This document shows, piece after piece, positions 58,243 through 58,372 of a stretch of 64,000 nucleotides of DNA. The stretch comes from Gekko japonicus (Eukaryota), in contig NW_015166427.1 in the NCBI RefSeq assembly GCF_001447785.1, forward strand, positions 823,620-887,619. Reading direction: 5' to 3'. Position 1 is the stretch's first letter; each line of letters opens with the position of its first letter. Both the position numbers and the translations under genes were made by a program. The notes under the pieces are model-generated. The model saw only the letters and a program-made list of their open reading frames with translations. It did not search any database and had not been told where the DNA came from.

Positions 58243-58372
58243 AATATAGCACTACTTCCCTCGTTCCTCTTGTGGTGCTCAAACAAGTGAAGAATTAAGT
58301 TCTTGGATTTGGTAACATGGCAAAAGATGCTGGCCTAATTGAAGCTAATGGAGAACTAAAGGTTTTTATAGA
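58243..58372 (+). other. TFDP1: Spliced TFDP1 exon2+exon3 cDNA segment located at the exon 1 / intron 1 boundary
   Basis: 58243-58328 is identical to 60398-60483 and is joined without an intron to GCTGGCCTAATTGAAGCTAATGGAGAACTAAAGGTTTTTATAGA. It reads [18 protein letters not shown], the N-terminus of DP-1. Confidence 0.9.

What the first reader, a model, noticed from the sequence alone, without database searches (positions are those of the whole stretch)
58243..58372. Spliced TFDP1 mRNA sequence written into its own gene at the exon 1 boundary
Seen: 86 nt identical to the real exon 2 (60398-60483) begin precisely at that exon's first base, with no acceptor AG or pyrimidine tract. They directly follow the GC-rich presumed exon 1 (..GAGGGGCCGG|AATATAGC). 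They are joined at the exact splice junction (AAAGAT|GCTGGC) to 44 nt of the next coding exon ([14 protein letters not shown]), which I did not find elsewhere in the window. The sequence then switches to intron-like DNA, giving [27 protein letters not shown] (58317-58400). No poly(A) or TSD was seen, so this is not an ordinary retrocopy. Inference: an exon-exon junction at the home locus needs a spliced RNA template. One explanation is in-cis RNA/cDNA-templated repair (an aborted intron-loss event that overwrote the exon 1 donor). The other is RNA-seq reads used to fill or polish a GC-rich low-coverage region. The 100% identity, read-like length and nearby N gap (58716-59042) favour the artefact.
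Basis: partly seen in the sequence, partly recalled or inferred. Interest (0 to 1): 0.85.

Follow-up and report, generated by a model that had tools for sequence, protein, structure and literature searches.

The report
Spliced TFDP1 block is assembly chimera
The 130 bases of spliced TFDP1 message that follow exon 1 are really in the window, but public reads show they were most likely stitched in by the short-read assembler from a second, intron-less DNA copy of the gene, so this is an ordinary assembly fault and not RNA written back into its own gene.

Summary
58242-58329 is a perfect copy of 60397-60484 (exon 2 plus one shared G each side). It is joined at the splice site to 44 nt of exon 3 that occur nowhere else in the window, and it sits directly after exon 1.

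Reads change the interpretation.
- Two DNA-type runs of the same species (X1, X2) carry contigs bridging exon1|exon2 and exon2|exon3 at about the same depth as the intron-flanked forms. Exons 2 and 3 are at about twice that depth.
- So a spliced TFDP1 copy exists as DNA, most likely a young retrocopy.
- One of these runs (X2) also shows the intact exon 1 donor (GGCCGG|GTAAGTGG...), which the window lacks.
- In both DNA runs and in one RNA-type run, exon 3 continues past 58372 as normal exon 3, with no fork. The window's right-hand joint (58372|58373) is therefore unsupported.
- 58373-58715 has the CpG-island composition of its surroundings and is probably true intron 1.

Earlier notes of this scan call the genome a Japanese gecko draft. 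That assembly used a 29-mer graph and then filled gaps with reads anchored by their mates, without RNA.

Best reading: the contig broke at the exon 1 fork, and gap filling walked into the spliced copy and then hopped back. Interest is low. The scan also noted own-exon copies in TMCO3 and PDPK1.

The parts
57700..58242 (+). CpG-island promoter and TFDP1 exon 1. Exon 1 ends at 58242 (..GGGGCCGG).
   Evidence: GC 0.60 and CpG o/e 0.83. In run X2 a contig continues after 58242 with GTAAGTGGAAACC.., a canonical donor. One 575-nt contig in X1 and in X2 covers about 57661-58242 and stops exactly at 58242, which marks a graph fork.
58243..58328 (+). Intron-less copy of TFDP1 exon 2 (86 nt; includes the ATG at 58317).
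   Evidence: 100% identical to 60398-60483. The 88-nt contig 58242-58329 is at depth 164 in X1 and 158 in X2, about twice the flanks. GC 0.38 and CpG o/e 0.22 for 58243-58372, unlike the island around it.
58329..58372 (+). First 44 nt of the 67-nt TFDP1 exon 3, joined to exon 2 at the splice junction.
   Evidence: Unique in the window. Contigs bridging 58300-58358 are at depth 79 (X1) and 59 (X2). A 69-nt contig (depth 165 / 147) covers 58329-58372 and runs on for 25 nt as CCAAAATCTTAGTCCTGGAAAAGGT, which codes DQNLSPGKG.
58372..58373 (+). Chimeric joint: the spliced block meets CpG-island DNA in mid-exon 3.
   Evidence: X1, X2 and X3 all leave the window at 58372 and continue as exon 3. No contig forks there and none crosses into 58373.
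58373..58715 (+). Probable interior of TFDP1 intron 1. The first 48 nt or more of the intron are missing from the window.
   Evidence: GC 0.58 and CpG o/e 0.74, like the flanking island. It has no other copy in the window. RNA-type run X3 holds 58492-58715 at depth 7.4, against 388 for the mRNA part. The true intron start GTAAGTGGAAACC.. is absent from the window.
58716..59043 (.). Run of 328 N (a gap left open, or masked). Not filled and not read.
60398..60483 (+). Real TFDP1 exon 2, with its acceptor (..ttgtttttag) and donor (gtaagtaag).
   Evidence: A 1429-nt X1 contig at depth 68.5 continues from exon 2 into exactly this intron 2 sequence.

Best explanation
The 130-nt spliced block is not part of the real TFDP1 locus. 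It is a chimeric fill-in made by a short-read assembler, and its source is a second, spliced copy of TFDP1 that exists as DNA in this species, most likely a young processed retrocopy elsewhere in the genome.

Steps shown:
(1) The genome holds both exon1->intron1 (GGCCGG|GTAAGTGG..) and exon1->exon2->exon3->(exon 4) forms at similar depth.
(2) K-mer graphs of two independent DNA-type runs therefore fork at the last base of exon 1.
(3) The window lacks the true start of intron 1.
(4) The window's joint at 58372|58373 exists in none of the runs examined.

Steps inferred:
(5) The assembler's contig ended at the exon 1 fork.
(6) The gap-filling stage collects reads whose mate maps to the flanking contig and assembles them locally. 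It took pairs from the spliced copy, with one mate in the shared exon 1 and the other in exons 2-3, and extended by 130 nt.
(7) It then joined onto genuine intron 1 reads from the same pool and stopped, leaving 328 N.
For: DNA-type runs X1 and X2. These cover the untranscribed promoter and intron 2 at depths of about 40-96.
- Junction contigs 58213-58271 (exon1|exon2) are at depth 67.8 (X1) and 58.6 (X2).
- Junction contigs 58300-58358 (exon2|exon3) are at 79 and 58.8.
- Intron-flanked contigs are at 68.5 and 74.9 (X1), and 50 and 95.8 (X2).
- The exon 2 contig is at 163.6 / 158.3 and the exon 3 contig at 165 / 146.8, close to the sum of the two forms.
- The exon 3 contig passes 58372 unbroken and ends where exon 3 should end, so the spliced copy goes on to the next exon.
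- X2 shows the intact donor after 58242.
- X3 (RNA-type) reads exon2-exon3-next exon and also leaves the window at 58372.

Other calls:
- the true intron 1 start is missing from the window.
- the block is an AT-rich, CpG-poor island inside one CpG island, and 58373-58715 matches the island.
- earlier notes name the genome as a Japanese gecko draft.
[quoted passage not shown] RNA-seq was used only for assessment and annotation.
- two other gaps in the window have the same 5-7 letters on both edges, a sign of imperfect gap handling.
- unchecked earlier notes list other mRNA retrocopies in this genome.
- Exon-exon junction reads in whole-genome data are the standard signature of retrocopies (PMC3554589).
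Against: - The spliced copy's own locus, ends, tail and target-site duplication were not seen.
- The 575-nt contig with promoter and exon 1 is unbranched in both runs, and its mean depth is no more than single copy (73.9 and 39.2). A retrocopy beginning at the transcription start should fork it. I can explain this only by GC bias plus a missed fork, or by a copy that shares the upstream DNA.
- The 'DNA' label of X1 and X2 is the tool's guess, though coverage of promoter and introns supports it.
- The reference individual's own reads were not examined, so a private real insertion in that animal is not strictly excluded.
- The species and assembly identity rest on earlier notes of this scan, not on a test made here.
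- X1 and X2 show no contig on 58373-58715. The tool warns that filtered records make such holes meaningless.
Confidence: 0.7

Rival explanations
1. RNA-derived sequence entered the assembly. Either RNA-seq reads were used to fill or polish, or cDNA contaminated the DNA libraries, and no spliced DNA copy exists in the genome. This would still be an artefact.
For: The block is a perfect match to the message and lies near a gap in GC-rich DNA. The same assembly has other own-exon oddities, noted but unchecked: TMCO3 in this window and PDPK1 elsewhere. It seems unlikely that each of these genes has an identical retrocopy.
Against: Both junctions are present in two DNA-type runs from another study, at about 0.6-1.1 times the local genomic depth. 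Contamination by a moderately expressed message would not be expected to land at single-copy depth twice. The published methods use DNA reads only for assembly and gap filling. The TMCO3 case contains no splice junction.
Confidence: 0.12
2. The spliced copy is real and lies at or next to the TFDP1 locus, sharing its promoter. It would be a partly processed duplicate or an intron-lost allele. The assembler collapsed the two, so the left joint (exon 1 to exon 2) is in the right place and only the right joint is false.
For: The promoter + exon 1 contig (575 nt) is unbranched in both runs and starts at the same point, about 57661. This is what a copy sharing at least 575 nt upstream would give.
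Against: That contig's depth is no more than single copy (73.9 and 39.2), while a shared segment should be double. An allele would need all three animals to be heterozygous. No direct evidence of linkage was obtained.
Confidence: 0.1
3. A real in-cis event in the sequenced animal: a double-strand break at the exon 1 donor was repaired from spliced TFDP1 RNA or cDNA. This inserted 130 nt and deleted the start of intron 1.
For: The left joint lies exactly at the exon 1 boundary. There is no poly(A) and no target-site duplication. The start of intron 1 is missing from the window.
Against: Neither DNA-type run has a fork at 58372, and both have exon 3 running on. X2 shows the intact donor. A simpler source for the spliced letters exists in the DNA. 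The event would have to be private to one animal and would disable the first donor of an essential cell-cycle gene on that chromosome.
Confidence: 0.05

Closest known systems
Gap-filling / repeat-induced chimeras in short-read de Bruijn assemblies (SOAPdenovo-type local assembly of mate-anchored reads)
   Same: The contig ends at a graph fork. Reads are recruited through a mate in shared sequence. A fill-in takes the wrong branch, there is an unsupported joint, and an open N run lies close by.
   Different: Here the 'repeat' is the gene's own spliced copy, so the error mimics a message written into its own gene. I did not see the assembler's intermediate files.
Processed retrocopies detected by exon-exon junction reads in whole-genome data (retroCNVs; PMC3554589, PMC4314676)
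   Same: Exon-exon junctions stand in DNA at about single-copy depth, exon depth is doubled, and the copy is identical to the parent.
   Different: The insertion site, tail and target-site duplication are unknown. The promoter/exon 1 contig shows no fork at the expected 5' end. In non-mammals retrocopies may arise through LTR elements rather than L1 (PMC5131818). That is not tested here.
Reverse-transcriptase-mediated intron loss / cDNA gene conversion at the home locus (own knowledge: Fink 1987 model; Derr and Strathern, yeast)
   Same: Exons are joined precisely at splice sites, next to the gene's own exon 1.
   Different: The introns and the real exon 2 are still in place, the intact donor is present in DNA, and the right-hand joint is not found in DNA.

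Membership tests
Assembly chimera (gap-fill artefact) | A joint in the assembly that independent reads do not cross | tested here: met
   X1, X2 and X3 all leave the window at 58372 and continue as exon 3. The 69-nt exon 3 contig does not fork there.
Assembly chimera (gap-fill artefact) | True sequence present in reads but missing from the assembly at that place | tested here: met
   In X2, GGCCGG is followed by GTAAGTGGAAACC... That string is absent from the window.
Assembly chimera (gap-fill artefact) | A pipeline able to make it (short reads, graph forks, mate-anchored local filling) and a nearby gap | tested here: inconclusive
   The supplement of PMC4673495 describes exactly this pipeline, and the N run is 343 nt away. 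However, that the window comes from this assembly rests on earlier notes.
Assembly chimera (gap-fill artefact) | No reads of the assembled individual itself cross the joint | not testable with these tools
The reference animal's own runs were not identified.
Processed retrocopy (as the source of the spliced letters) | Exon-exon junctions present in genomic DNA | tested here: met
   junction contigs at depth 58.6-79 in two DNA-type runs, with exons at about twice the flanking depth.
Processed retrocopy (as the source of the spliced letters) | Its own insertion site away from the parent, with a tail and a target-site duplication | not testable with these tools
There is no poly(A) or duplication in the window, as expected if the window holds only a fragment.
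Processed retrocopy (as the source of the spliced letters) | 5' end at the transcription start, which would give a fork inside exon 1 | tested here: not met
   the 575-nt promoter + exon 1 contig is unbranched in X1 and X2. This keeps the retrocopy label provisional.
RNA/cDNA-templated repair or intron loss at the home locus | Both joints of the spliced block present in genomic DNA at the locus | tested here: not met
   The right joint is absent in X1 and X2, and the intact donor is present in X2.
RNA-seq reads used in assembly | Junctions carried by RNA runs only | tested here: not met
   The junctions are in DNA-type runs at genomic depth. The methods list DNA reads only.

The most novel reading that the evidence does not exclude
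The spliced TFDP1 copy is not a distant retrocopy. It is a promoter-sharing, intron-less version of the gene at or beside the home locus, either an intron-lost allele or a tandem partly processed duplicate made by cDNA recombination with exon 1. The window would then preserve its true left joint. The unbranched 575-nt promoter + exon 1 contig in both DNA runs is the one observation that points this way.
Probability: 0.08. Interest if true: 0.7.

Novelty: not a real feature. Interest (0 to 1): 0.15.

Why it matters
Taken at face value, the block would be a rare direct trace of spliced RNA copied back into its own gene. The reads show it is more likely a trap for annotators. It removes the true exon 1 donor, adds a false start codon with a 27-codon reading frame ahead of the real exon 2, and can mislead gene models for TFDP1 in this draft. 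The practical lessons are two. First, exon-exon joints inside a gene's own locus in short-read, gap-filled assemblies should be checked against reads before any biological reading. Second, this gecko probably carries a very young spliced DNA copy of TFDP1 that could be located in a long-read assembly.

Tried and rejected
- A second copy of the exon 3 piece, of 58373-58715, of the true intron 1 start or of the intron 2 acceptor in the window: none found.
- Rfam scan of 57600-58715: no match.
- Tandem repeats in 58300-58715: none. Only a short motif occurs three times.
- Earlier findings searched by sequence for the block: blank. The word TFDP1 occurs in no other note.
- RNA-seq fill-in as the source: rejected on the depth of the junctions in DNA-type runs and on the published methods.
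- In-cis repair: rejected on the missing right joint.
- Treating the TMCO3 event as a second case of the same process: not accepted. It holds no splice junction.
Exons were scanned singly by reference.
- No N was filled. One RNA-type contig runs 88 nt into the N run, and I did not read those letters.

Full report
**What is in the window**

- 58242-58329 is identical to 60397-60484. This is the 86-nt exon 2 of the gene plus one G on each side that happens to be shared.
- The real exon 2 at 60398-60483 has a pyrimidine tract and AG in front and GTAAGT behind.
- The copy at 58243 is preceded by ..GAGGGGCCGG, with no acceptor.
- The next 44 nt (58329-58372) code [14 protein letters not shown] and occur nowhere else in the window.
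- The N run is 58716-59043, 328 nt.
- A scan for all exact duplicates of 24 nt or more finds only two isolated exon-derived ones in the 64 kb: this one, and a 30-nt piece of the upstream gene.

The gene identity as TFDP1 rests on my knowledge of the human N-terminus ([29 protein letters not shown]). The reads extend the window's 18 residues with [11 protein letters not shown]. The upstream neighbour has a Na/H-exchanger exon, as TMCO3 should.

**What public reads show (runs chosen)**

Four runs of the same species label were laid on 57800-58715. The stretch was chosen to avoid the N run and the second exon 2 copy.

X1 and X2 are labelled 'DNA?'. They cover the untranscribed promoter and intron 2 at depths of about 40-96 and have contigs up to 107 kb, so I take them as whole-genome DNA. 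They differ from the window by a few SNPs and a 7-nt indel, so they are other individuals.

In both runs the k-mer contigs break exactly at exon borders:
- A 575-nt contig with promoter and exon 1 ends at 58242.
- A 59-nt contig bridges exon1|exon2, at depth 67.8 (X1) and 58.6 (X2).
- The 88-nt exon 2 contig is at 163.6 and 158.3.
- A 59-nt contig bridges exon2|exon3, at 79 and 58.8.
- A 69-nt contig holds exon 3, at 165 and 146.8.

Beside these stand the intron-flanked forms:
- Exon 2 into the window's own intron 2: 1429 nt, depth 68.5.
- Intron 2 acceptor into exon 3: depths 74.9 and 95.8.
- In X2, exon 1 into GTAAGTGGAAACCGTTGCGCACC.. : depth 50.

So DNA of this species holds two forms at similar dosage. 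One has introns. The other has exons 1, 2 and 3 joined. The exon 3 contig ends just where the 67-nt exon 3 should end, so the joined form goes on to the next exon.

Exon-exon junction reads at genomic depth, with doubled exon depth, are the accepted signature of a gene retrocopy (PMC3554589, PMC4314676).

**The right-hand joint is not supported**

In X1, X2 and the RNA-type X3, the sequence after 58372 is CCAAAATCTTAGTCCTGGAAAAGGT.., the normal rest of exon 3. It is not the window's AGGAGCGAGAGG... The exon 3 contig passes 58372 without a fork in both DNA runs, so neither animal has the window's joint.

The one RNA run kept as raw reads (X21) gave only three partly fitting reads. Their depth profile tiles 58242-58440 with no gap and no overlap around 58372/58373. 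This is what clipping of unrelated reads on both sides of a false joint would give. It is an inference from binned depth and is weak.

**What follows the block**

58373-58715 has GC 0.58 and CpG o/e 0.74. This is like the promoter (0.60, 0.83) and the DNA after the gap (0.58, about 0.55). The 130-nt block itself has GC 0.38 and CpG o/e 0.22.

The block is therefore a foreign, AT-rich piece inside one CpG island, and the stretch after it is most simply true intron 1. The first 48 nt or more of intron 1, seen in X2, are absent from the window.

X3 holds 58492-58715 at 2% of the mRNA depth, as unspliced precursor RNA would. X1 and X2 show no contig there. The tool warns that filtered records leave holes that prove nothing, and I leave this unexplained.

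**How the artefact could arise**

Earlier notes of this scan describe the genome as a Japanese gecko draft. This is a lead I did not verify.

The paper for that assembly (PMC4673495) used Illumina reads only:
- SOAPdenovo 2.04 on a 29-mer graph, then SSPACE.
[quoted passage not shown] - RNA-seq served only to assess the assembly and refine genes.

With a spliced copy in the DNA, the graph forks at the last base of exon 1, as it does in the X1 and X2 graphs, and the contig ends there. Pairs from the spliced copy have one mate in the shared exon 1 and the other in exons 2-3. They are therefore recruited into the gap's read pool together with genuine intron 1 reads.

A local assembly that takes the spliced branch for 130 nt and then joins onto intron 1 reads reproduces the window exactly, including the lost intron start and the N run that remains. 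These last steps are inferred.

Two other gaps in the window have the same 5-7 letters on both edges, which shows imperfect gap handling in the same scaffold.

**What does not fit**

A retrocopy that begins at the transcription start should fork the promoter + exon 1 contig somewhere inside exon 1. The contig is unbranched in both runs, starts at the same place in both, and has a mean depth no higher than single copy. Yet two branches of about 50 and 59 leave its end in X2.

Strong GC bias could hide the doubling, but the missing fork is unexplained. It keeps alive a reading in which the spliced copy shares the upstream DNA (rival 2 and the novel case).

**Comparison and verdict**

The block works like a gap-fill chimera seeded by a gene's own spliced DNA copy.
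- It fails the tests for in-cis RNA-templated repair or intron loss: the right joint is absent from DNA, the donor is intact, and the real exon 2 and its introns are still in place.
- It fails the tests for RNA-seq-derived filling: the junctions are present in DNA.

The retrocopy label for the source is provisional, because its locus and ends were not seen. As a feature of the TFDP1 locus the block is not real. The likely young TFDP1 retrocopy behind it is an ordinary kind of thing.

**The TMCO3 event**

The same reader noted an event in TMCO3 at 39692-39736. It is a 30-nt exact copy of exon 10 (39699-39728 = 43149-43178) inside exon 9, flanked by GCTTTTA twice. It holds no splice junction. 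I do not count it as a second case of the same process.

**Limits**
- One reads call and one run search were allowed, and both are used.
- No N was filled or read.

Noticed in passing
window 39692-39743 and 43144-43294: TMCO3 exon 9 holds a 30-nt exact copy (39699-39728) of the real exon 10 (43149-43178). It is followed by one C and flanked by the 7-nt string GCTTTTA on both sides, and it creates a stop (..AFKIY*). It contains no exon-exon junction, so the retrocopy plus gap-fill model does not explain it. It could be a templated insertion or another assembly fault.
   Followed up: partly
window 14188-14755: Tandem duplication with a 284-nt unit, nearly identical copies and a 146-nt exact block (14326-14471 = 14610-14755). 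It may be a real duplication or an assembly stutter. Its content was not examined.
   Followed up: no
window 4528-4550 and 30522-30551: Two short N runs have the same letters on both edges (CTCTT; GTAGGGA). This suggests false gaps where the two sides really overlap.
   Followed up: partly
window 57798-57804, 57835, 57971: Both DNA-type runs differ from the window in the TFDP1 promoter. They lack about 7 nt near 57798-57804 and have G>A at 57835. X1 also has G>A at 57971. These are ordinary polymorphisms, and they show the runs come from other individuals.
   Followed up: partly
window 58464-58662: The short motif GCAGCCCGAYYCT occurs three times, at spacings of 108 and 72 nt, in the probable intron 1. 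Its meaning is unknown.
   Followed up: no
window 58492-58715: An RNA-type run holds this stretch, and 88 nt beyond it into the N run (not read), at depth 7.4 against 388 for the TFDP1 message. It may be precursor RNA or a promoter-proximal transcript.
   Followed up: no
window 44088-44245 and 45308-45465: A pair of inverted near-identical segments, with exact blocks of 27-49 nt, lies about 1.2 kb apart downstream of TMCO3 exon 10. They are probably two copies of a mobile element in opposite orientation.
   Followed up: no
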